A DNA stretch of 63,701 bases, filler included, from Octopus bimaculoides (Eukaryota): assembly GCF_001194135.2 (NCBI RefSeq). It is 3 parts of 3 records of this genome, joined end to end, with 100 filler letters (N's around TTAATTAATTAA, not from the genome) between each part and the next. Parts side by side here need not be neighbours in the genome. Positions count along the whole stretch, not along the records: positions 1 to 27,483 come from NC_068993.1; 2 more parts are not named here. One strand, given 5' to 3'. Each line of letters begins with the position of its first letter. Within the stretch, counting starts at the first letter, position 1. Under the pieces are notes generated by a model, which worked only from the letters and a program-made list of their open reading frames with translations, was not told the DNA's origin and did no database searches. The position numbers and the translations under genes are program-made. Shown piece by piece: positions 13,480 to 27,483 of the stretch.

Positions 13480-13820
13480 CTTTTACTCTTTTACTTGTTT
13501 CAGTCATTTGACTGCGGCCATGCTGGAGCACCGCCAGGACTTAATCTTTGTAAGCCTAGTACTTATTCTATCGGTCTCTTTTTGCCGAACCACTAAGTTA
13601 TGGGGACGTAAACCTACCAGCATTGGTTGTCAAGCGATGGTGGTGGTGGGGGGACAAATATAGACACACAAACACACATACATATATATACATATACATA
13701 TGTACGACGGGCTTCTTTCAGTTTCTGTCTACCAAATCCACTCACAAGGCTTTGGTCGGCCCGAGGCTATAGTAGAAGACACTTGCCCAAGGTGCCACCC
13801 AGTGGGAATGAACCCGGAAC
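13480..13820 (-). mobile_element. SINE family B, near full length
   Basis: High similarity to the reverse complement of 16549-16922. Confidence 0.85.
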
Positions 13821-13837
13821 CATATATATATATATAT

Positions 13838-16121
13838 AAGGACTGGAAAGATGGTGGTAGCAAGGAGCTATATCAGGCAGCTATAAGGGAAGTTAGGAAG
13901 CAGATATACTTAGCCAGGGGTGAAGTAGAAAGAAAGAAGTTTGCCAATGTTCTGCAGTGTGAGGACCAGCGGCTTGAAGTGTTTCTGTTTGCAAGACAGT
14001 GTGCCAGGGAAAATTGTGATGTTGTAGGAGAGAAGTGGGTTCCCATGGATGATGGTTCACTTGCAGCTGCAAAGAAAGAGGCTTGGAAGTGCCACTATGA
14101 AAGGCTACCAAATGAAGACAATTCATTGGAGAAAGAGAATCTGCCTAATGTTGATTGAACAGAGGGACCAGCAATCCAAATATGCAGTCACATTGCAGAC
14201 AAATCCATGAAGGATACAGAGATGGGGAAAGCCCCCCCCCCCCAGCCCATCAGGAATAATCATTGTGATGCTTAAAATATCTGGCGGTGTGGGTTATGGT
14301 CTAGTTACCTGTATAGTTAATTAGGTGGTACACAAAGGAGTCATACCCAATGACTGGTGTAGCAGCACTTTAGTTAACTGCCACAAAGGTAAATGTCTTG
14401 CCTTAGATAAAAATAATTACAGTGGTATCAGATTGTTGGATCAGGTGATGAATATCATGGAGAGGGTCATAGCCCAACTAATTAGGGAGAGAGTTTGTCC
14501 AGATGAGATGCAGTTTGGTTTTGTGCCAGGGAGAAGCACTATTGATGCTATTTTTCTGGTAAGACAGTTGCAAGAGAAATACCTAGCCAAAGATAAACCT
14601 CTGTACTTGGCTTTTGTTGACTTGAAGAAAGCCCTTGACAGGGTCCCCTGATCCCTTATCTGGTGGTCAATACAGAAACTAGAGATAGAAGAGTGGTTAG
14701 TGAGATGTTCATCATAGTCTTCCTGAGCAATAACAGGCGAATTTAAGACAAGATGCTCCTGGGAGCTCATCTATGCTGATGACCTTGTTTTTATAGCTGA
14801 ATCACTACCAGAACTAGATAAGAAATTTCAAGTGTGGAAGCAGGGTCTAGAATCAAAGGGCCTTAGAGTTAGCCTAGCAAAAATCAAAGTCTTAGTAAGT
14901 AGGAAAGCAGAAAAATCACAAATGCCTTCAGGTGGATGACCCTGCTCAATCTGTAAGAAAGGCATAGGTAGAAATTCCATAAGATGTACCTGGTGCAAGC
15001 TATGGACACATGAAAGGTGCAGCAATATCAGAGGAAGGTTAACTGGGAAAATAACTTTTGTGTGTGGAACGCGCACAAACACATTAAACTCTAAAAATGT
15101 ACAGAAGACAGACTCCGCCAACTGCCAAGATGGTAAGCTAGAAGTACTTGAGCAATAGAAGTACAACTGCCAGGAGGGTAAGCTAGAAACTTTTGTTATC
15201 TAGGTGACCCAGTCAATAGCAGAGGTAGATGCTCTGAGAGCATAAGAATAGGCTGAGCAAAGTTCAGAGAGCTCCTGCCTCTGTTGACAACAAAGGGCCT
15301 CTTCCTCAGAATGAAAGGCAGATTGTTTGATGCCTGTGTGAAAACAGCCATGCTGCACAGCAGTGAAACATGGGTTGTGACTGCTGAGGACATGCAAAGG
15401 ACTGCAAAAAATGAAGCTAGCATGCTTCATTGGATGTACAATGTTAGTGTGCATGTACAACAGACTGTAAGTGTCTTGAAAGAAAAGTTGGGTATAAGAG
15501 GCATCAGATGTGGTATGTAAGAGAGATGACTATGCTGGTATGGTCATGTGATGCATATGGACGAGGACAGCTGTGTAAAGAAGTACCAGTCTCTAACTGT
15601 GGAGGGAACCTGTGGGAGAGGTAGACATGGTATGGGATGGTGAAGTATGATCTCAAAATGTTGTGACCAAAATCTTTGGTGATATGCTGTACTTGAAAGG
15701 ACCCGTCAAGCCATTTGAAATTGTGGTTGTGGCTGATGTTGGTGTCATATAACTGGCACCCATGCCAGTGGCATGTAAAAAGCACCTTTCAAGCATTGAG
15801 CTTCATGGAAGCAATGTGGCCAATGCCAGTGTTGCATAATTAGCACTTGTGCTGGTGGCACAAAAATTGTACCTCTCAAGCATTGGGCCTCATGGAGGCA
15901 GTGATAAATGACTGAGACCTTCACCAATATGCTGTGCTTGAGTAGCAGACCCATCAAGCCAAGTTAAAGTGTTGTCATGGCAGATACTAATGTCATGCAA
16001 CTGGTGTAAAACTACGCCAAATTAGACATGAGTCTGGTGCAGCCCTTCAGCTTGCCAGCCATGGTCAAACCATCCAACCCATGTCAGCATGGACAATGGA
16101 CGTTAAATGATGATGATGATA

Positions 16122-16167
<46 letters not shown>

Positions 16168-16168
16168 G
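13838..16168 (+). mobile_element. 5'-truncated, decayed RTE-clade LINE (RT domain, Cys-rich insert, 3' UTR, (GAT)n tail)
   Basis: RT motifs QFGFVPGRSTIDAIF, AFVDLKKALDRVP and ELIYADDLVF (~14765-14795); CSICKKGIGRNSIRCTWCKLWTHERC; KTAMLHSSETW; multiple stops, frameshifts and deletions; ends GGACGTTAAATGATGATGAT. Confidence 0.92.
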
Positions 16169-16199
16169 GATATATATATATAAAGAGCGTGATTGTTAC

Positions 16200-16536
16200 T
16201 AGCGTTGCCTTCCTGGCACTTGTGCCGGTGGCATGTGAAAAGACATTCGAGCGAGGTCATTGCCAGTGCCGCTGGACTGGCTCCTGTGCAGGTGGCACGT
16301 AAAATACACCATTTTGAGAGTGACCATTGCCAGTACCGCCTTACTGGCCTTCGTGCCTGTGGCACGTAAAAGCACCCACTACACTCTCGGAGTGGTTGGC
16401 GTTAGGAAGGGCATCCAGCTGTAGAAACTCTGCCAGATCAGATTGGAGCCTGGTGTAGCCATCTAGTTTGCCAGTCAAATCATCCAACCCATGCTAGCAT
16501 GGAAAGCGGATGTTAAACGTTGATGATGATGATGAT
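16200..16536 (+). mobile_element. Second RTE 3' UTR/tail copy (or RTE-mobilised SINE)
   Basis: GTGGCACGTAAAA repeats, GTTGGCGTTAGGAAGGGCATCCAGC and CATCCAACCCATGCTAGCATGG, then (GAT)n. Confidence 0.8.
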
Positions 16537-16548
16537 TGATATATATAT

Positions 16549-16922
16549 AGGAGTGCCTGTGTGGTAAGTAGCTACCAACCACATGGTTCAGGGTTCAGTC
16601 CCACTGCGTCGCACCATGGGCAAGTGTCTTCTACTATAGCCTTGGGCCGACCAAAGTGTTCTAAGTGGATTTGATAGAAGGAAGCTGAAAGAAGCCCGTT
16701 GTGTGTGTGTATTTGTGTATCTGTGTTTATCTCCCCACCACCATCGCTTGACAACTGATGTTGGCATGTCTACCTCCCTGTAACTTAGCGTTTCGGCAAA
16801 AAAGACCGATAGAATAAGTACTAGGCTTACAAAAAATAAGTCCTGGGGTCGATTTCTTCGACTAAAGGCGGTGCTCCAGCATGGCTGCAGTCAAATCACT
16901 GAAACAAATAAAAGAATAAAAG
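16549..16922 (+). mobile_element. SINE family B, full length (tRNA-like head)
   Basis: Head with GTGTGGTAAG (A-box-like) and GGTTCAGTCCC (B-box-like), internal (TG)n, 3' CAGCATGGCTGCAGTCAAAT...GAAACAAATAAAAG. Confidence 0.88.
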
Positions 16923-17329
16923 AATATATATATAGATAGTGAAAAAGAGAGAGAAACACTTACATATATACACGCGCCCGCACACGCACACACAAGCACA
17001 CACATATATGAAGTAGCTGCCAAAGCTGAAGGATTGTCAAGTATAATTCACTGCTACATTTGTTATTGTGTGTACAATAACCATTCCTAAGTTGTAAGTG
17101 GTTTGTCAGGAAGCTGGATGACGGAAAAAACAAAAAGAGAAAAAAACACCCACTCTTCCTCAGAAAACCGTCAGGAGAGACAATATCATAGTCATCATGT
17201 TGTTTACTTTCTGAAACAAGAGTTATCTCCCCTAGAAATGTCAACATAAATCCACTCAGTACGAATTGCAAGATGGAAATGTTGATTTCAATATAATGTA
17301 TTTCTGGTTTCAAATTTTGGCACAAAACC

Positions 17330-17742: not shown

Positions 17743-18144
17743 AAACATTGGGGGCTAACGCAGAATCGCACCTCTCCTGGAAAATGCATTTTTAAAAAAC
17801 ATTTTTTCGGATTCCTACGTTTTAGATGTCTGAGATNNNNNNNNNNNNNNNNNNNNNNNNNNNNNNNNNNNNNNNNNNNNNNNNNNNNNNNNNNNNNNNN
17901 NNNNNNNNNNNNNNNNNNNNNNNNNNNNNNNNNNNNNNNNNNNNNNNNNNNNNNNNNNNNNNNNNNNNNNNNNNNNNNNNNNNNNNNNNNNNNNNNNNNN
18001 NNNNNNNNNNNNNNNNNNNNNNNNNNNNNNNNNNNNNNNNNNNNNNNNNNNNNNNNNNNNNNTGCAGCGAGTTCCTGTTTTTGATGAGGGAGATTCTGAA
18101 TATGCAAGAAACCATGCTTTCAAAATTTTAAATTCAATAAGCAT

Positions 18145-20420: not shown

Positions 20421-20610
20421 TATGATGCATTTAGATAGCCCTTGTGAGATGTCATTTAAAAACCACTTATCTAGTCAATATANNNNNNNNNNNNNNNNNN
20501 NNNNNNNNNNNNNNNNNNNNNNNNNNNNNNNNNNNNNNNNNNNNNNNNNNNNNNNNNNNNNNNNNNNNNNNNNNNNNNNNNNNNNNNNNNNNNNNNNNNN
20601 NNNNNNNCAA

Positions 20611-21209
20611 TGTAACGGTTTTTAGGTGTTGTGTAGTCGATGTGTCACCCATTGTAACGATAAGTATTATTTACCGTTACTTTATATGTTGTCATACCAC
20701 GACGGGTAGGCCAGTGTAATAGTATAACAGTTTGTACGTAAAGCATACAATGTTAAGAATTTCGGCCTGTATCTGTATGTACACTTTTTCATAGTAGTAA
20801 TTATATATAGAGAGAGATGGTAGGGTTATAGAGAAATGGATGCGAGCTCGTATGCCTGCTTGTGTCCATGACTCTAGATGTCCAGTCGTCACCGACCAGC
20901 GACCAAGCTGTCGAGGCGTCACCGATTGGTGACTAAAGAGACACTTTTCTTGTGGTCTCCTGTTTTTATAGCTATCAAGGATAGTGAGAACAAAGGATTC
21001 TATTCTAGATTTGATGAAGTAGAAGAGGTCAGAAAAGGGTCAAGTGATGGAGACACCGCTTCGGCCTAGCTAAAGGCGTCTGGGACATATCTAACTGCTG
21101 TCAGAACAAAACCGTTGTTCCACTGCGGGAAAAGTTCTGACGCAGTGTTAATTCAAATTTGTGGCATAGTGGATCGAATCCACTTCACGCCTGCCAGATT
21201 CCTATATCA
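20611..21209. mobile_element. Probable unrelated solo LTR (about 600 bp)
   Basis: Starts TGTAAC and ends TATATCA; internal TATA-like run; no coding capacity; TSD not assessable because of the adjacent gap. Confidence 0.4.
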
Positions 21210-23108: not shown

Positions 23109-24005
23109 AGTTAATCCATATAATACTGACACAGTCAAGAAATTTGTATTGAATGTTTAGTGTAGAGAAAAACCATTATCGTAAAATAAAATAAGGAATA
23201 AAAGAAACTGCGTTATCAATTTACTCATTCATGGAGAAAAAGGGCCAACGTATACAAGCCTAGAGAATTATGCTTTCAAAAGTAAATTACTTGAAAATTA
23301 AAATTTTTTCTATCCCACCTCTAGTATCTTTATTTGTCCTTTATTTATGTCTTGTAGAATATATTGCGTTTTATTTTAATTAGAGGTTTCCAGGAAACTT
23401 TTAAGGATTCATCACAACTAGTATTCAAAACTAAATCACAGACACGACTGCATCGTTTTCTTAGATACACTAAAAAAACATAAGTAAATGAATTAAATTA
23501 AATAAACTTAAGAAAATTCTGTAATTAAACTGGTTTTCCGAGGCTATGAAATATTAAAACTTTCGCCCGACCGATGTTATAAGTTAATCATGTACTAAAG
23601 CTATCTTCATTAGTGTTAGCCTTCCTTTGTGACGTATGAAGTTTATCTATTGAAAGAAGTTGTTAATATCTGTACCGTTCTTGTCTAGCTAGCACCCATA
23701 GCTGAAAAGTAGCCTAACCAACCAACTAAGTATTTGGTTTGGTATAGAGAGAAATGATGATTTTATAGTCACATATTTACTGCAGAAAGCATCATAAAAG
23801 GAAAGTGTTTATGCGGTGAGGAATAAAAAAGGAAAAGCAACAATAATAGTCAAGGACTAATATTGATACTTTGATTCTTTCAGCAGCTTTTTCTTCAATT
23901 ATTGTGGTAGAAGGGTGCCTTTAAACCACAATTATATACTTGTTTTTGTTTTATGAATGTTGTTCGTTAAAAAACCCCTTTAAGGCGCCGAAAACTTATT
24001 CTGCA

Positions 24006-24938
24006 ATGCAAAACAAAAAGACCCAAACGTTAAGTAAAAGTGAACTCATTTACTGGCTCCGAGAAAACATTTCTCCGCATTTGAATTGCATACAAGATCT
24101 TGGAACAGGAGCCGAATTTTGTCTGGGTGTTGAAATTCTCTTTCCTGGATCAATAGATTTAGAGAAAATTAGATTCGGTGAGAAAACAGAAGATGGTAGA
24201 AGGAAAAATTTCCAACAACTTCAAGACGCTCTTACCAAAATGAATGTCAATATTAATATTCCAGTAGAAAATTTGATCAAAGGTAGCTTTAAGTACAATT
24301 TGTATTTTGGACAATGGTTTAAACAGTTTTTCGAAAAACATTATAATTGTAGGTCGTATGATATAATGAAACTCGAAACATTAGAATCTAATAAAAGACA
24401 CCGAGTTAAAAATTCTAAATCAACGAAGAAAATGTATAAAAAAAGATGGCCAGTTGAGATGTCAGGAGATGTTTCTTTAAATAAAGGCATAGTTCGGAAA
24501 GACGAAAATATATCTCCGTTAAATCACGATGTCGTTGACGAACCGAAACTAATAGCCAATAAATTAGCAATCACATATACGGAATATTCGGATAATTTTA
24601 ACAAGAAATCAGATTCAGTAATTTCAAATAGCCGTGACACGAGTTCAAATCCAAACACGCAAACTAGCAACACCAGTATGGACGCAGAATCAGACGACAC
24701 GTTCCTGCCATCTGATATACGTATGCAAGCGGAATATAAGTCATATGTATTTGTTCTGCGTGCATTAGAAAAAAATGTACAACATCTACAACACGAGAAT
24801 AAAATGTTGAGAGAAGAGAATATGCAAATGAAAGAAAAGAACGAGCGCCTGAAGCTGGAGATCGAAACATATCAGAGAATAAAAGCAGAGTGTCGAATGA
24901 TGGCTTGTCTGCTAGAACGATTTAGGGAATATCGTTAA
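24006..24938 (+). CDS. MAPRE-like: Intronless, divergent EB1/MAPRE-family protein (310 aa): N-terminal CH domain, S/T/D/N-rich linker, C-terminal coiled coil
   Basis: LSKSELIYWLREN...IQDLGTGAEFC...ILFPGSIDLEKIRF...KNFQQLQDALTKMNVNINIPVENLIKGSFKYNLYFGQWFKQFFEKHY aligns colinearly with the EB1 CH domain (SRHDMLAWINES...LCSGAAYC...LFPGSIALKKVKF...[47 protein letters not shown]). First in-frame ATG is 24006 (the track start at 23940 is TTG); uninterrupted 933-nt ORF. Confidence 0.88.
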   Translation: MQNKKTQTLSKSELIYWLRENISPHLNCIQDLGTGAEFCLGVEILFPGSIDLEKIRFGEKTEDGRRKNFQQLQDALTKMNVNINIPVENLIKGSFKYNLYFGQWFKQFFEKHYNCRSYDIMKLETLESNKRHRVKNSKSTKKMYKKRWPVEMSGDVSLNKGIVRKDENISPLNHDVVDEPKLIANKLAITYTEYSDNFNKKSDSVISNSRDTSSNPNTQTSNTSMDAESDDTFLPSDIRMQAEYKSYVFVLRALEKNVQHLQHENKMLREENMQMKEKNERLKLEIETYQRIKAECRMMACLLERFREYR

Positions 24939-24985
24939 TATAATTGAGAGGGCTGAGAAATAGACATTTGGCAAAGTTAAATTTG

Positions 24986-24991
24986 AATAAA
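24986..24991 (+). terminator. Candidate polyadenylation signal of the EB1-like gene
   Basis: AATAAA 47 nt after the stop codon. Confidence 0.45.
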
Positions 24992-25331
24992 CAAAATTAT
25001 AAAGACACAACCTACACTGTATATAAATAGTTGAGGGGGAAATGAACTATTCTGCATAGGTTGAAAAACTTCGCTTATGCATGTAATTAGCAAACATTTC
25101 TGGGTACAGAGGTGTCGACTATTTCGAATGGAAATATTGTAAAAACCTTGCAGAAATTCTGAAAAATGGGAGTAAATGATGAATACATAAATACAAATAT
25201 TAATCAGTCGTAGAAATTAGCATAAACCATTATAGCTTTTATTCGTTTATAAGACATACCTTTCACCTCGCTAACTGTTAAACTTCAAAATTAGGAGTAT
25301 GGGGTAAAATTAATTATTCAAAATTAATTAT

Positions 25332-27330
25332 TCACCGTTCCCTCTGTGGCCGCCGTGGGACTTCAGAACTGGCCTCAGTTCTTGTCCATAACTGTTGGCC
25401 CCATCCTCCGTCGCAGTGACGATCCTGTGTACATCCAAAAACATGCTGTGGCATACCATCTACGGACACATTGTTCCTCGAATTTACAAAGGTTATTGTC
25501 CCCTTTCCCAATTGTGATATGCACCGCGCATTTGGGAGTTTAACCCAGACTTCTTCCCCGACCTGCACAAAGGTATGCTCTTTCTCTTCTGCAGGATGCA
25601 GTGATGTAGTACATGGATGTCTCCACTCGTACTTGAATATTGCCCTGTGTGGAACTTACTCTTCAGCCTGTCCCGTCCTGAGCGACATATTATACCAAAA
25701 AAACGGCCTCGACCGATGAGATGTGGCCCCTCTCTGCTATGGTCTTGATGGTGCGATGATGCCTCTCCACAACCCCATTTCCACTTGGCCGGTATGCCGC
25801 TCTGAAGAAACGGCTAACATGCCACTTGTCGAGCATTTCCTCCAGCACCTCCGAGCGAAACGCAGTGCCATTGTCCACAAGCAGCTCATTCACGGGGTCT
25901 CGTTCTAGGAATATCTCATTCAGTATTCTTGTGATTTCCTCCGCGGTCCCCGTCTTCATTTCCCTCCATATGGCCAACCGCCCCGGTCCGCAGTCGACCA
26001 TCGAGAGGTATGTTCCCTGCCGGTAATGCGTCACGTCCACTGCCAGTCGTTTCCAGCTGTGTTGCACTGGAATGCTTCCTGCCTGATGCACACCCGGAGT
26101 GGGGTCAATGGACTGGCACCTGTCGCAGCTCCCAACTACTCTTTGCACACTCTGCTTGGTCACGTCCAAGTCAACTTTCCTGGCTAGGAACAGGGTCCTG
26201 TCCACCCCTATGTGATGCATGGTATGCAGTCTCCTCAGCCCCGAGTCACTCAGTCGACACACTGCAGCCACTCCTTGCTCTAGATCCTCTGGCACCTGCA
26301 ACCAAGCTTTCTTTACTCTGCTCAGGACGTTCGCTCTATTCCTCTCAGAGGACACAAAAACCACACTCAGCTTCAGGTCAAACTGGGCAGCTAGCTCGCC
26401 CAGAATTTCCAAATGGCGTTTTATCAGCATCTCTGCGCTCCCTTTGGTTCGCACTCTCTGCTTGCTGGTGACCACTGATCCCACCCATCTAAGTACAGTG
26501 GCCGAATCGGTCCGGATCTCGATGGTACGCAACCCCCCACCTCAGGGCCAGGTTCAGCCCTTTTAACACGGCATCCAGCTCCACTACGTTGTTGTGGTTG
26601 CAGTCGCCCTTCTTCCTAAACCAGGCTGCATCCTCCACCACGACACCTCCAATTTCCAGGACAACTCCCGTTGCTATGCTGCTGGCATCACACCACACGA
26701 TCCCATTCTTCAATTTAGACACATACCAGTTTCCTCTTAATGGGTCCTCCGCAGTCCCTCTCTCCAAGACTTCTTGCATCACTCCTTCAGCTCGCCTATT
26801 GATGAAGCTGCATGCCGTCCGGATCCATCCTGCTATCGGGTAGTGTCCCAGCAGCATCCCACTCACAGAAAACAGTTCTCGCCTATACGTCTTGGAGCCC
26901 TGTTCCGGAATCTCATTCCCTCTCCGAAATACCAATGCGCCGGCCTTGTCTCTGCGTAGCTTAAGTCCCAGTGCAGCGTCTCCTTCCATCGCCTCCGGCG
27001 GTTTGGCAGTTAGCCCAAAACTCTTCAGGTGGCTTATGACCTCCTTTGCCGACATTATGCTCTCGTCTACCAGGATGTCATCAATATAGGAATTGGTGGC
27101 TTTTTTCACTTTGTCCACCTTTCCCAGGATGGTTTTGAGAATCGTCGCCATAATCTTCGGTGCTGAATTAAGCCCGAATCCCAACCTGGTCAGGCAGTAT
27201 GTCCGGCCCTTATACCTTACTAGCTGATATTTCCACAGTCTCTCAGCCATATGCAGCTGCAGGTATGCCGACTTCAAATCGACGATTGTGGAGGCCCCTG
27301 TCATCTACCTCCATTCTCTCAAGGTTTCGC
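25332..27330 (-). mobile_element. Ty3/Gypsy pol remnant (RT-RNase H-integrase), frameshifted
   Basis: VDLKSAYLQL, LGFGLNSAP, SYIDDILV (RT); WCDASS...VELDA...RTDSATV (RNase H); HTMHHIG...CDRC, LAVDVTH, LVDNGTAF, NGVVERHHRTIK (HHCC plus D,D35E integrase). RT-RH-IN order. Frameshift near 26530 and in-frame stop before 27304. Confidence 0.95.
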
Positions 27331-27483
27331 TGCAAATATCCGTAGCTGATGTGAAGGAGGAAAAAGACGGAAGCAAAGAGAGAACTGCGGTAGTCTTACC
27401 TGTCGGTCCGGAAAAGGGTCGCTTTCAACGTCCACGTGCGCTACTCGTCGCTGTACAGTCTAACACGTCTGCTGTGGTGCGCT

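What the first reader, a model, noticed from the sequence alone, without database searches (positions are those of the whole stretch)
24006..24938. Intact, intronless, highly divergent EB1/MAPRE paralogue in a transposon graveyard
Seen: a 310-codon uninterrupted ORF with a colinear EB1-type CH domain, while every neighbouring transposon ORF is broken. Known: animal EB1 genes are usually multi-exon and very conserved. Inference: this is a lineage-specific retrogene or paralogue kept open by selection and evolving fast, possibly one of an expanded cephalopod EB-like family (for example germline or neuronal microtubule regulation).
Basis: partly seen in the sequence, partly recalled or inferred. 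Interest (0 to 1): 0.75.

Follow-up and report, generated by a model that had tools for sequence, protein, structure and literature searches.

The report
Divergent single-exon octopus EB1-like gene
This is a real, selectively maintained octopus gene for a strongly diverged relative of the microtubule-end protein EB1 that has lost EB1's partner-docking end; it belongs to a so far undescribed cephalopod family of mostly intron-free EB-like genes, which is moderately interesting rather than a new kind of thing.

Summary
Window 24006-24938 (+) is an uninterrupted 310-codon ORF, and residues 7-120 are an EB1/EB3-type CH domain (PDB phmmer E 1.7e-24; model superposes on EB1 at about 1 Å). Intact, intron-free orthologues exist in Octopus sinensis (86% identity), an unnamed octopod (77%) and Argonauta hians (56%). 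dN/dS is 0.30-0.47 overall, 0.14-0.32 in the CH domain and about 1 only in the disordered linker. The gene is therefore under purifying selection and is neither a pseudogene nor the ordinary EB1.

It belongs to a distinct clade of about 14 EB-like clusters. Every named member is an octopod, and seven of eight coding sequences examined are uninterrupted.

The protein has a CH domain, a basic-then-acidic disordered linker and a conserved nine-heptad leucine zipper. It ends 14 residues after the conserved EBH cysteine, so it lacks EBH helix 2, the FYF pocket and the EEY tail. EB1 K89 and Q102 are replaced by Ile and Lys.

My best reading is a dimeric microtubule-associated protein uncoupled from the +TIP network, analogous to the Drosophila retrogene Mst27D. 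Expression, microtubule binding and the canonical parent gene could not be tested. I class it as a new member of a known kind.

The parts
24006..24938 (+). Complete single-exon coding sequence of the EB-like protein (310 aa plus stop)
   Evidence: ORF scan. The orthologues are colinear and start at the same Met. dN/dS is 0.30-0.47.
24024..24365 (+). EB-type calponin-homology (CH) domain, residues about 7-120
   Evidence: PDB phmmer to EB1/EB3 CH gives E 1.7e-24. AlphaFold pLDDT is about 95. Foldseek finds EB1/EB3 at RMSD 1.0-1.5 Å. dN/dS is 0.14-0.32. EB1 K89 is Ile83 and EB1 Q102 is Lys96, both invariant in the four orthologues.
24366..24500 (+). Basic part of the disordered linker, residues 121-165 (14 K/R against 4 D/E)
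   Evidence: Composition. pLDDT falls from about 70 (residues 121-130, where the model has a short helix 120-128) to 40-51 beyond residue 130. This is the fastest-evolving part together with the next segment (linker dN/dS 0.44-1.09).
24501..24716 (+). Acidic, Ser/Thr-rich part of the disordered linker, residues 166-237, ending in the conserved ESDDTFLPSD patch
   Evidence: Composition is 5 K/R against 14 D/E. The invariant residues E228, S229, D231, P235 and D237 are seen in the alignment.
24717..24932 (+). C-terminal leucine-zipper coiled coil, residues 238-309, derived from the EB coiled coil plus the first EBH helix; it ends 14 residues after the conserved Cys296
   Evidence: AlphaFold predicts a single helix 238-309 with pLDDT 90-97. 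The d positions are Y247/L254/L261/L268/M275/L282/Y289/C296/L303, and Asn occupies a positions 265/272/279; all are conserved. BLASTP to paralogue P0008 aligns up to this end, and P0008 continues into an EBH helix-2-like ...IVDIL... segment. hhalign places it in the EBH register.
24986..24991 (+). AATAAA, a candidate polyadenylation signal 48 nt after the stop
   Evidence: Read directly from the sequence. It lies within the 3' flank that is 92% conserved with O. sinensis. Its function is inferred, not shown.
23251..24005 (+). Upstream flank conserved with O. sinensis (92%), presumed to hold the 5'UTR and promoter; a pyrimidine tract followed by AG at about 23940-23984 could be a splice acceptor for a 5'UTR intron
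   Evidence: blastn: window 23251-25178 aligns with L001 9260-11179 at 92.1%. The sequence was read. The splice acceptor is an inference only.

Best explanation
The ORF is a functional protein-coding gene. It is a lineage-specific, fast-evolving member of the EB (MAPRE) family and one of a cephalopod group of EB-like genes whose coding regions lie in a single exon. The group most probably descends from one old retrocopy of canonical EB1 that then multiplied by DNA duplication.

The protein keeps an EB-type CH domain and a basic linker segment. It also keeps a nine-heptad parallel leucine zipper that corresponds to the EB1 coiled coil plus the first EBH helix. It has lost EBH helix 2, the FYF hydrophobic pocket and the acidic EEY tail.

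The most likely mechanism has two steps. The zipper makes a homodimer that presents two CH domains to microtubules. Because the SxIP- and CAP-Gly-docking surfaces are absent, the protein cannot recruit the +TIP network. It would then act as a tissue-specific microtubule binder, bundler or adaptor, or as a competitor for EB sites, as Drosophila Mst27D does.

Shown here: gene integrity, orthology, purifying selection, the CH fold, the heptad pattern, loss of EBH and EEY, and family membership. Inferred: dimerisation, microtubule binding (weakened or altered by K89I and Q102K), the retro-origin and any tissue specificity.
For: - Intact orthologues in three other octopods, each with an uninterrupted coding sequence.
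- dN/dS of 0.30-0.47, with Fisher p 8e-6 to 2.5e-4. The CH domain and C-terminal coil are more constrained than the linker.
- Conserved synteny with O. sinensis, including the downstream retroelement.
- CH domain equivalent to EB1/EB3.
- Conserved heptad a/d pattern with Asn at a positions, and a confident long helix.
- No Pfam EB1 motif at E<=1, and the protein ends 14 aa after the conserved Cys.
- The C-termini of the other family members match canonical EBH in hhalign at 96.7% probability, E 3e-10. The orthogroup aligns to the family in the same register at E 6e-4.
- A family clade of about 14 clusters, with orthogroup bootstrap 199/200 and family bootstrap 113/200.
- Single-exon coding sequences in P0005, P0010, P0012, P0013 and P0029.
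- Tandem pair P0010/P0027 and the internal CH duplication in P0005, which point to DNA-level duplication.
[quoted passage not shown] It arose by retroposition, binds along microtubules as a dimer, and its C-terminus binds a cargo (PMC10359004).
Against: - Of 38 CH positions that are at least 80% conserved in 133 canonical EB domains, 15 are changed. One is K89 to Ile, specific to this orthogroup, and K89E abolishes tubulin binding by EB1 (PMC7240100). Microtubule binding may therefore be weak or lost.
- I obtained no expression evidence. The Logan contigs are colinear with the genome and cannot be told apart from genomic assemblies.
- Family monophyly has only 56% NJ bootstrap support, on a 125-column alignment.
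- Direct hhalign of the orthogroup C-terminus against canonical EBH is not significant (9% probability).
- No poly(A) remnant or target-site duplication is visible.
- The canonical intron-containing octopus EB1 was not retrieved.
Confidence: 0.62

Rival explanations
1. The gene is functional, but the CH domain has been repurposed. With K89I, Q102K, D103Y and other surface changes it no longer binds microtubules, and the protein works as a coiled-coil adaptor for some other partner.
For: The orthogroup-specific K89 to Ile change sits at a residue whose mutation abolishes tubulin binding in EB1. Fifteen of 38 conserved EB positions are changed yet invariant among the four orthologues, which suggests selection for a new surface.
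Against: Much of the EB CH core and several basic residues are kept, including K92 (EB1 K98), N98, the F101/W104/F105 block and K/R56. A basic linker segment follows the CH domain, as in EBs. The similarly diverged Mst27D CH domain still binds microtubules when dimerised.
Confidence: 0.25
2. It acts mainly as a negative regulator of canonical EB1. It would either occupy EB binding sites at growing ends without bringing +TIPs, or form zipper heterodimers with EB1 that have only half an EBH.
For: It keeps the CH domain and the coiled coil in the EB register, but has no EBH helix 2 and no EEY. This is the architecture expected of a dominant-negative EB.
Against: The zipper sequence is very different from canonical EB coiled coils (hhalign 9% probability). 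Mst27D did not co-precipitate Eb1. The Q102K and K89I changes argue against normal end recognition.
Confidence: 0.1
3. It is a decaying retropseudogene or a chance ORF that merely happens to be open in this genome.
For: It sits among degraded retroelements and has no introns. I have no expression data.
Against: The chance expectation for such an ORF is about 6e-8. It is open in four species, across a split with dS of about 1. dN/dS is significantly below 1, and constraint follows the domain structure.
Confidence: 0.02
4. It is the ordinary, single EB1 orthologue of octopus.
For: NCBI pipelines name the orthologues 'RP/EB family member 1-like'. I could not retrieve a canonical octopus EB1 with the capped searches.
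Against: Its CH domain is 36-41% identical to human EB1, against 57-99% for the closest canonical EB domains recovered. It has no EBH motif and no EEY tail. At least five distinct family genes exist in A. hians alone, and one of them, P0029, keeps the EB1 motif above Pfam's cutoff.
Confidence: 0.01

Closest known systems
Canonical EB1/EB3 (MAPRE1/3; Mal3, Bim1)
   Same: It has an N-terminal EB-type CH domain (41% identity to human EB1, about 1 Å RMSD), a disordered linker that starts basic, and a C-terminal parallel coiled coil in the same register as the EB1 coiled coil and first EBH helix.
   Different: It has no EBH helix 2, no FYF pocket and no acidic EEY/F tail, ending in ...RFREYR. K89 is Ile, Q102 is Lys and D103 is Tyr. 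The coding sequence is a single exon, and it evolves far faster than canonical EBs.
Drosophila Mst27D and the testis-specific EB1-family genes CG15306, CG32371 and CG2955 (PMC10359004)
   Same: They are lineage-specific, strongly diverged EB paralogues. [quoted passage not shown] Mst27D itself arose by retroposition. It dimerises through its C-terminal region and decorates the microtubule lattice rather than tracking ends.
   Different: The origin is independent, in insects rather than cephalopods, and no sequence relationship beyond the EB CH domain was tested. Mst27D's C-terminus binds Nup358, and no partner is known here. Testis expression is documented for Mst27D and untested for the octopus gene.
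Other members of the octopod EB-like clade (P0005/P0006 with tandem CH domains, P0008, P0010, P0012, P0027, P0029)
   Same: They share derived CH residues: N25 to R, A43 to D/E, Y44 to F/L, L28 to I and R17 to K. Their coding sequences are single-exon and their linkers are divergent.
   Different: P0029, and weakly P0014 and P0032, still carry the Pfam EB1 motif. P0008 keeps an EBH helix-2-like end. P0005 has two CH domains, and P0010 has a coiled coil of about 400 aa. Most keep Lys at EB1 K89, whereas the window orthogroup has Ile.

Membership tests
EB (MAPRE, RP/EB) family | N-terminal EB-type CH domain | tested here: met
   PDB phmmer E 1.7e-24 to EB1 CH. Foldseek top 15 hits are all EB1/EB3/Bim1/Mal3 at RMSD 1.0-1.9 Å. 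The generic Pfam CH model scores only 23.3 bits, below its 26-bit cutoff.
EB (MAPRE, RP/EB) family | Coiled-coil dimerisation region after a flexible linker | tested here: met
   This is a prediction only. AlphaFold gives a helix 238-309 with pLDDT 90-97. Nine conserved heptads carry L/M/Y/C at d positions and V/N/N/N/I at a positions. The oligomeric state was not measured.
EB (MAPRE, RP/EB) family | EB-homology (EBH) domain: FYF pocket plus second helix forming the four-helix bundle (Pfam PF03271) | tested here: not met
   No PF03271 hit at E<=1. The protein stops 14 residues after the conserved Cys, and the FYF positions read EIE/TY. Only a remnant of EBH helix 1 is detectable, through family intermediates.
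EB (MAPRE, RP/EB) family | Acidic C-terminal tail ending in EEY/F (CAP-Gly docking) | tested here: not met
   The C-termini are ...RFREYR...RFRDYR and ...RFREYT in the four orthologues.
EB (MAPRE, RP/EB) family | Conserved microtubule-contact residues (EB1 K89, Q102) | tested here: not met
   K89 is Ile83 and Q102 is Lys96, both invariant in the orthogroup. In the 133 canonical domains K89 is 89% conserved and Q102 is 86% conserved. K89E abolishes tubulin binding (PMC7240100).
EB (MAPRE, RP/EB) family | Autonomous tracking of growing microtubule plus ends | not testable with these tools
   This needs live imaging or TIRF reconstitution.
EB (MAPRE, RP/EB) family | Common descent with canonical EBs over both the CH domain and the C-terminus | tested here: met
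   CH homology is shown. The C-termini of the other family members match canonical EBH in hhalign at 96.7% probability, E 3e-10. The orthogroup aligns to the family at E 6e-4 in the same register, and end to end with P0008 in BLASTP at E 2e-45.
Retrogene (processed copy of a multi-exon parent) | Coding sequence without introns where the parent has introns | tested here: inconclusive
   The coding sequence is uninterrupted here and in seven other family loci. The multi-exon structure of canonical EB1 is taken from general knowledge, because the octopus parent was not retrieved. A 5'UTR intron cannot be excluded.
Retrogene (processed copy of a multi-exon parent) | Poly(A) remnant and target-site duplications at the insertion | tested here: not met
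   No A-run follows the AATAAA at 24986-24991, and no flanking direct repeat was noticed on reading the flanks; no repeat search was run on them. This is expected to be erased at this age (dS about 1 to Argonauta), and it is uninformative if the gene arose by DNA duplication of an older retrocopy.
Mst27D-like testis EB paralogues (functional analogy only) | Male-germline-specific expression and lattice binding or bundling | not testable with these tools
   I found no usable expression data. The run accessions could not be traced in the literature.

The most novel reading that the evidence does not exclude
Coleoid cephalopods carry an old, retro-derived radiation of a dozen or more EB-like genes that have progressively shed the +TIP-recruiting EBH/EEY module, convergent with the testis-specific EB1 paralogues of Drosophila. 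Within that radiation the window gene's lineage (K89I, Q102K, truncated EBH) has acquired a new binding specificity. That could be a different microtubule lattice or nucleotide state, or a non-tubulin ligand, serving a cephalopod-specific cell type such as the elongated sperm manchette or giant axons.
Probability: 0.2. Interest if true: 0.6.

Novelty: new member of a known kind. Interest (0 to 1): 0.4.

Why it matters
EB proteins are the hub of the microtubule plus-end network and are normally among the most conserved cytoskeletal proteins. A clade of single-exon EB-like genes that keeps the CH domain and the dimerising coil while discarding the partner-docking module is a natural separation-of-function series. 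It shows which parts of EB1 can evolve independently. It also offers natural variants at K89 and Q102 for studying nucleotide-state recognition.

The family would be a second, independent case, after the Drosophila testis paralogues and Mst27D, of EB duplication and retroposition producing specialised microtubule linkers. For cephalopod genomics, it adds a lineage-specific cytoskeletal gene family that automated annotation currently labels only as 'RP/EB family member 1-like' or 'uncharacterized'.

Tried and rejected
- The profile search of the 90%-clustered database with the 20-member family alignment re-found only six proteins, all seen before, so it did not enumerate named paralogues.
- The last protein search was meant to retrieve the canonical octopus EB1. 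Its query, P0105, turned out to be a tunicate protein. It gave 3346 hits, and the 120 listed included one bivalve and no cephalopod.
- Literature searches for the SRA, ENA and ERZ accessions of the unnamed relatives found nothing relevant. Their species and library type therefore remain unknown.
- The Logan contigs carrying the 77% orthologue are colinear with the genome and end at the same points in five runs. Other family contigs begin inside a (TA)n microsatellite followed by TTTTTAG. None of them can be used as expression evidence.
- The first AlphaFold run, with a four-sequence alignment, was useless (pLDDT 48). A 55-sequence alignment fixed this.
- Direct hhalign of the orthogroup C-terminus against canonical EBH was not significant. 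Only the route through family intermediates worked.
- The 'TFLP' motif at residues 232-235 resembles SxIP. It is not conserved (TFMP, TLLP, LFLP in the orthologues) and lies in an acidic context, so I did not treat it as a real SxIP motif.
- Transposon-mediated gene capture was considered. The paralogous loci share only coding-sequence similarity and generic interspersed repeats, and the flanks are syntenic between species.
- No Rfam family or tRNA was found in the piece.

Full report
**Observation.** The ORF scan lists one long open frame at 23940-24938 (+). Its first ATG is at 24006, which gives 310 codons and a stop at 24936-24938. With the local composition (33% GC, stop probability 0.08 per codon), a 332-codon open frame is expected about 6e-8 times in the piece. 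Every other ORF of 90 aa or more in the piece is either a low-complexity translation of microsatellites or a fragment of a retroelement.

The retroelement fragments are these. A partial reverse transcriptase lies at 14325-14651 (+). On the minus strand immediately downstream of the gene lie an RT/DUF7047 ORF (26489-27304) and an integrase-core ORF (25690-26532). The two are in different frames, and the element has 52-56% GC against 33% for the gene.

**What the protein is.** Residues 7-120 match the CH domains of human EB1 and EB3 with no gaps. PDB phmmer gives E 1.7e-24 to 2e-22.

A four-sequence AlphaFold run failed (pLDDT 48). With a 55-sequence alignment the model is confident:
- The CH domain has pLDDT of about 95.
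- Beyond a short predicted helix (120-128), the linker from about residue 130 to 230 is disordered (pLDDT 40-51).
- Residues 238-309 form one long helix with pLDDT 90-97.

Foldseek places the CH domain on EB1, EB3, Bim1 and Mal3 structures at RMSD 1.0-1.9 Å, well ahead of actin-binding CH domains. Pfam's generic CH model scores just below its cutoff (23.3 against 26 bits), and no EB1 C-terminal motif (PF03271) is found even at E<=1.

**Orthologues and selection.** The word-indexed search found four relatives besides the window's own protein:
- an O. sinensis protein (312 aa, 86% identity, named 'RP/EB family member 1-like');
- an unnamed protein from five SRA-run assemblies (313 aa, 77%);
- an Argonauta hians protein (310 aa, 56%);
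- an O. bimaculoides paralogue (441 aa).

The O. sinensis and A. hians coding sequences occupy exactly 939 and 933 nt, so they are uninterrupted.

The window aligns with the O. sinensis locus at 92% from 755 nt upstream of the ATG to 240 nt beyond the stop. It aligns again at 89% across the downstream retroelement, so that insertion predates the species split. Repeats in the window are up to 98% identical to an O. bimaculoides locus, which suggests the window comes from that species.

Nei-Gojobori dN/dS, by region:

| Region | dN/dS |
|---|---|
| Whole gene | 0.30-0.47 |
| CH domain | 0.14-0.32 |
| C-terminal helix | 0.15-0.44 |
| Linker | 0.44-1.09 |

The excess of synonymous change is significant. 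Fisher p is 8e-6 for window against O. sinensis, and 1.4e-11 for the CH domain against Argonauta, where dS is already about 1.

**Family.** A profile of the four orthologues was searched against 1.84 billion representatives and gave 1579 hits. The top hits are not canonical EBs. They form a distinct set of about 14 clusters at 50% identity: P0004, 6-14, 27, 29, 32 and 52. Their CH domains are 28-59% identical to one another between clusters and 28-42% identical to human EB1. By contrast, the 70 canonical EB domains closest to human EB1 among those recovered are 57-99% identical to it.

In an NJ tree these clusters form one clade. Bootstrap support is 113/200 for the clade, 199/200 for the window orthogroup and 176/200 for a basal subgroup. 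The clade shares derived residues at otherwise conserved EB positions: N25 to R, A43 to D/E, Y44 to F/L, L28 to I and R17 to K.

All named members are octopod: five distinct A. hians genes, one from O. vulgaris and one from O. bimaculoides. One unnamed paralogue, P0008, comes from the same run series as the 77% orthologue, so the two coexist in one species. Three unnamed members match octopod genes only at 67-71% nucleotide identity within the CH-coding region. One of them, an 11-kb locus, also lacks octopod repeats. They may be decapodiform orthologues, but their species could not be established.

Seven of the eight family coding sequences whose loci I could read are uninterrupted: the window gene, its O. 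sinensis and A. hians orthologues, P0005, P0010, P0012, P0013 and P0029. P0027 is almost so. P0010 and P0027 lie 5.5 kb apart in tandem, and P0005/P0006 carry two CH domains.

The simplest history is one ancient retrocopy of EB1 followed by DNA-level duplications. This is an inference. No poly(A) or target-site relic is visible at the window gene, and I could not retrieve the canonical octopus EB1.

**The C-terminus.** The basal members of the clade still carry the Pfam EB1 motif. P0029 scores 28.1 bits against a 27-bit cutoff, and P0014 and P0032 score weakly. The pooled C-termini of the other family members match canonical EBH in hhalign at 96.7% probability, E 3e-10. The window orthogroup aligns to those family C-termini at E 6e-4 in the same register, with YQRIKAEC aligned to KLRNIELIC of EB1. 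Its direct match to canonical EBH is not significant.

BLASTP aligns the window protein end to end with paralogue P0008 at E 2e-45. P0008 then continues for 32 residues into an EBH helix-2-like '...EEIVDILKD...' segment, which the window protein lacks. The window protein ends 14 residues after the conserved Cys296. It has EIE/TY where EB1 has the FYF pocket, and it terminates in RFREYR rather than an acidic EEY.

What remains is a regular zipper. The d positions are Y247, L254, L261, L268, M275, L282, Y289, C296 and L303. The a positions are L251, V258, N265, N272, N279 and I286. Nearly all are invariant in the four species. Three Asn residues at a positions are the classic signature of an in-register parallel dimer; this is established coiled-coil knowledge and was not measured here.

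**The microtubule-binding surface.** Of 38 alignment positions that are at least 80% conserved in 133 canonical EB CH domains, the orthogroup differs at 15. These include K89 to Ile (most other family members keep Lys), Q102 to Lys and D103 to Tyr. All three are invariant among the four orthologues. K89E abolishes tubulin binding by the EB1 CH domain (Hayashi and Ikura 2003, as reported in PMC7240100). Basic residues equivalent to EB1 K62, K66 and K98 are kept, and the first 45 residues of the linker carry 14 K/R against 4 D/E.

**Mechanism.** I commit to a homodimer formed by the zipper. The dimer presents two EB-type CH domains, backed by a basic linker segment, to microtubules. Because the SxIP and CAP-Gly docking surfaces are gone, it would bind without recruiting the +TIP network. 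The K89I and Q102K changes make normal GTP-cap recognition unlikely and favour lattice binding, bundling, or a role as an adaptor. In the adaptor role the conserved acidic ESDDTFLPSD patch and the zipper surface would hold a cargo.

The closest characterised precedent is Drosophila Mst27D. Its similarity to EB1 is largely restricted to an EB-like CH domain, which is followed by a coiled coil, and it arose by retroposition from the testis-specific EB paralogue CG15306. It dimerises through its C-terminal region, decorates microtubules along their length and bundles them, and links them to Nup358 in spermatids (PMC10359004).

The main rival reading is that the CH domain no longer binds microtubules at all. 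A dominant-negative role towards EB1 is a lesser rival. The pseudogene, chance-ORF and 'ordinary EB1' readings are excluded by the data above.

**Novelty.** The orthologues are already predicted by NCBI pipelines as 'RP/EB family member 1-like'. In the searchable literature I found no description of a cephalopod EB-like family. The only trace is a 'MAPRE1' gene drawn inside the giant-squid Hox cluster (PMC6962438). The architecture has a precedent in Drosophila. I therefore rate this as a new member of a known kind, of moderate interest. Its value lies in the family-wide pattern of single-exon genes with stepwise loss of the EBH/EEY module, more than in this one gene.

**Not resolved.** Four things remain open: expression and tissue, the actual oligomeric state and microtubule binding, the taxonomic depth of the family beyond octopods, and the location and structure of the canonical parent gene.

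Noticed in passing
L001 11191-11422 (O. sinensis), corresponding to window 24225-24444: About 250 nt after its stop codon, the O. sinensis orthologue carries a roughly 230-bp second copy of the CH-coding segment. It is 93% identical and has in-frame stops. The window has unrelated sequence at that place (25179-25379).
   Followed up: partly
L002 and L003 (A. hians BAAFZT010000020.1, 47.64 Mb and 33.10 Mb): The whole A. hians locus, at least 20 kb, is present twice at 98.5-99.7% identity in opposite orientation, 14.5 Mb apart on one contig. The coding sequences are identical. This is either a very recent segmental duplication or an assembly artefact.
   Followed up: partly
window 25380-27483 (-): A degraded LTR-type retroelement fragment holds an RT/DUF7047 ORF and an integrase-core ORF in different frames, and is cut by the edge of the piece. 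Its GC content is 52-56%, against 33% around the gene. The same insertion is present at the orthologous site in O. sinensis at 89% identity, so it is old.
   Followed up: partly
window about 7073-7694, 10142-10297, 12525-12951, 13479-13823, 16549-16923: Copies of an interspersed repeat of about 400 bp lie in both orientations. The same repeat recurs many times in the O. sinensis, O. bimaculoides and A. hians loci at 65-96% identity. ARAGORN finds no tRNA-like part in the window.
   Followed up: no
L009 10001-11326 (O. bimaculoides LOC128247397, P0005); A. hians P0006: A paralogue carries two EB-type CH domains in tandem in one single-exon ORF of 441 aa. The two domains are about 50% identical to each other, and the arrangement is conserved between Octopus and Argonauta. 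A double-CH EB protein is unusual.
   Followed up: partly
L010 10001-12088 and 17559-19342 (A. hians): Two family members lie in tandem 5.5 kb apart. P0010 is 695 aa with a coiled coil of about 400 residues, and P0027 is 355 aa. P0027 is the only family gene examined whose annotated coding sequence is not fully uninterrupted.
   Followed up: partly
window 13700-14651 (+): A LINE-like fragment consists of two separate ORFs. The second matches only the N-terminal third of the RVT_1 reverse-transcriptase model.
   Followed up: no
window 1-2700, 8900-9300 and 16100-16300; N runs near 1900, 17800-18080 and 20480-20640: Long microsatellite and low-complexity tracts produce spurious ORFs rich in Y/I/H/T/C. 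The piece also contains several assembly gaps.
   Followed up: no
window 24699-24710 (residues 232-235, TFLP): An SxIP-like tetrapeptide sits inside the conserved acidic patch ESDDTFLPSD. The first and third positions vary among the orthologues (TFMP, TLLP, LFLP) and the context is acidic, so it is probably not an EB-binding motif. The patch itself is conserved and unexplained.
   Followed up: partly
literature: PMC6962438, Fig. legend on the Architeuthis dux Hox cluster: A gene annotated MAPRE1 is drawn among the non-Hox genes inside the giant-squid Hox cluster. It might be a decapodiform member of this EB-like family. I did not check this.
   Followed up: no
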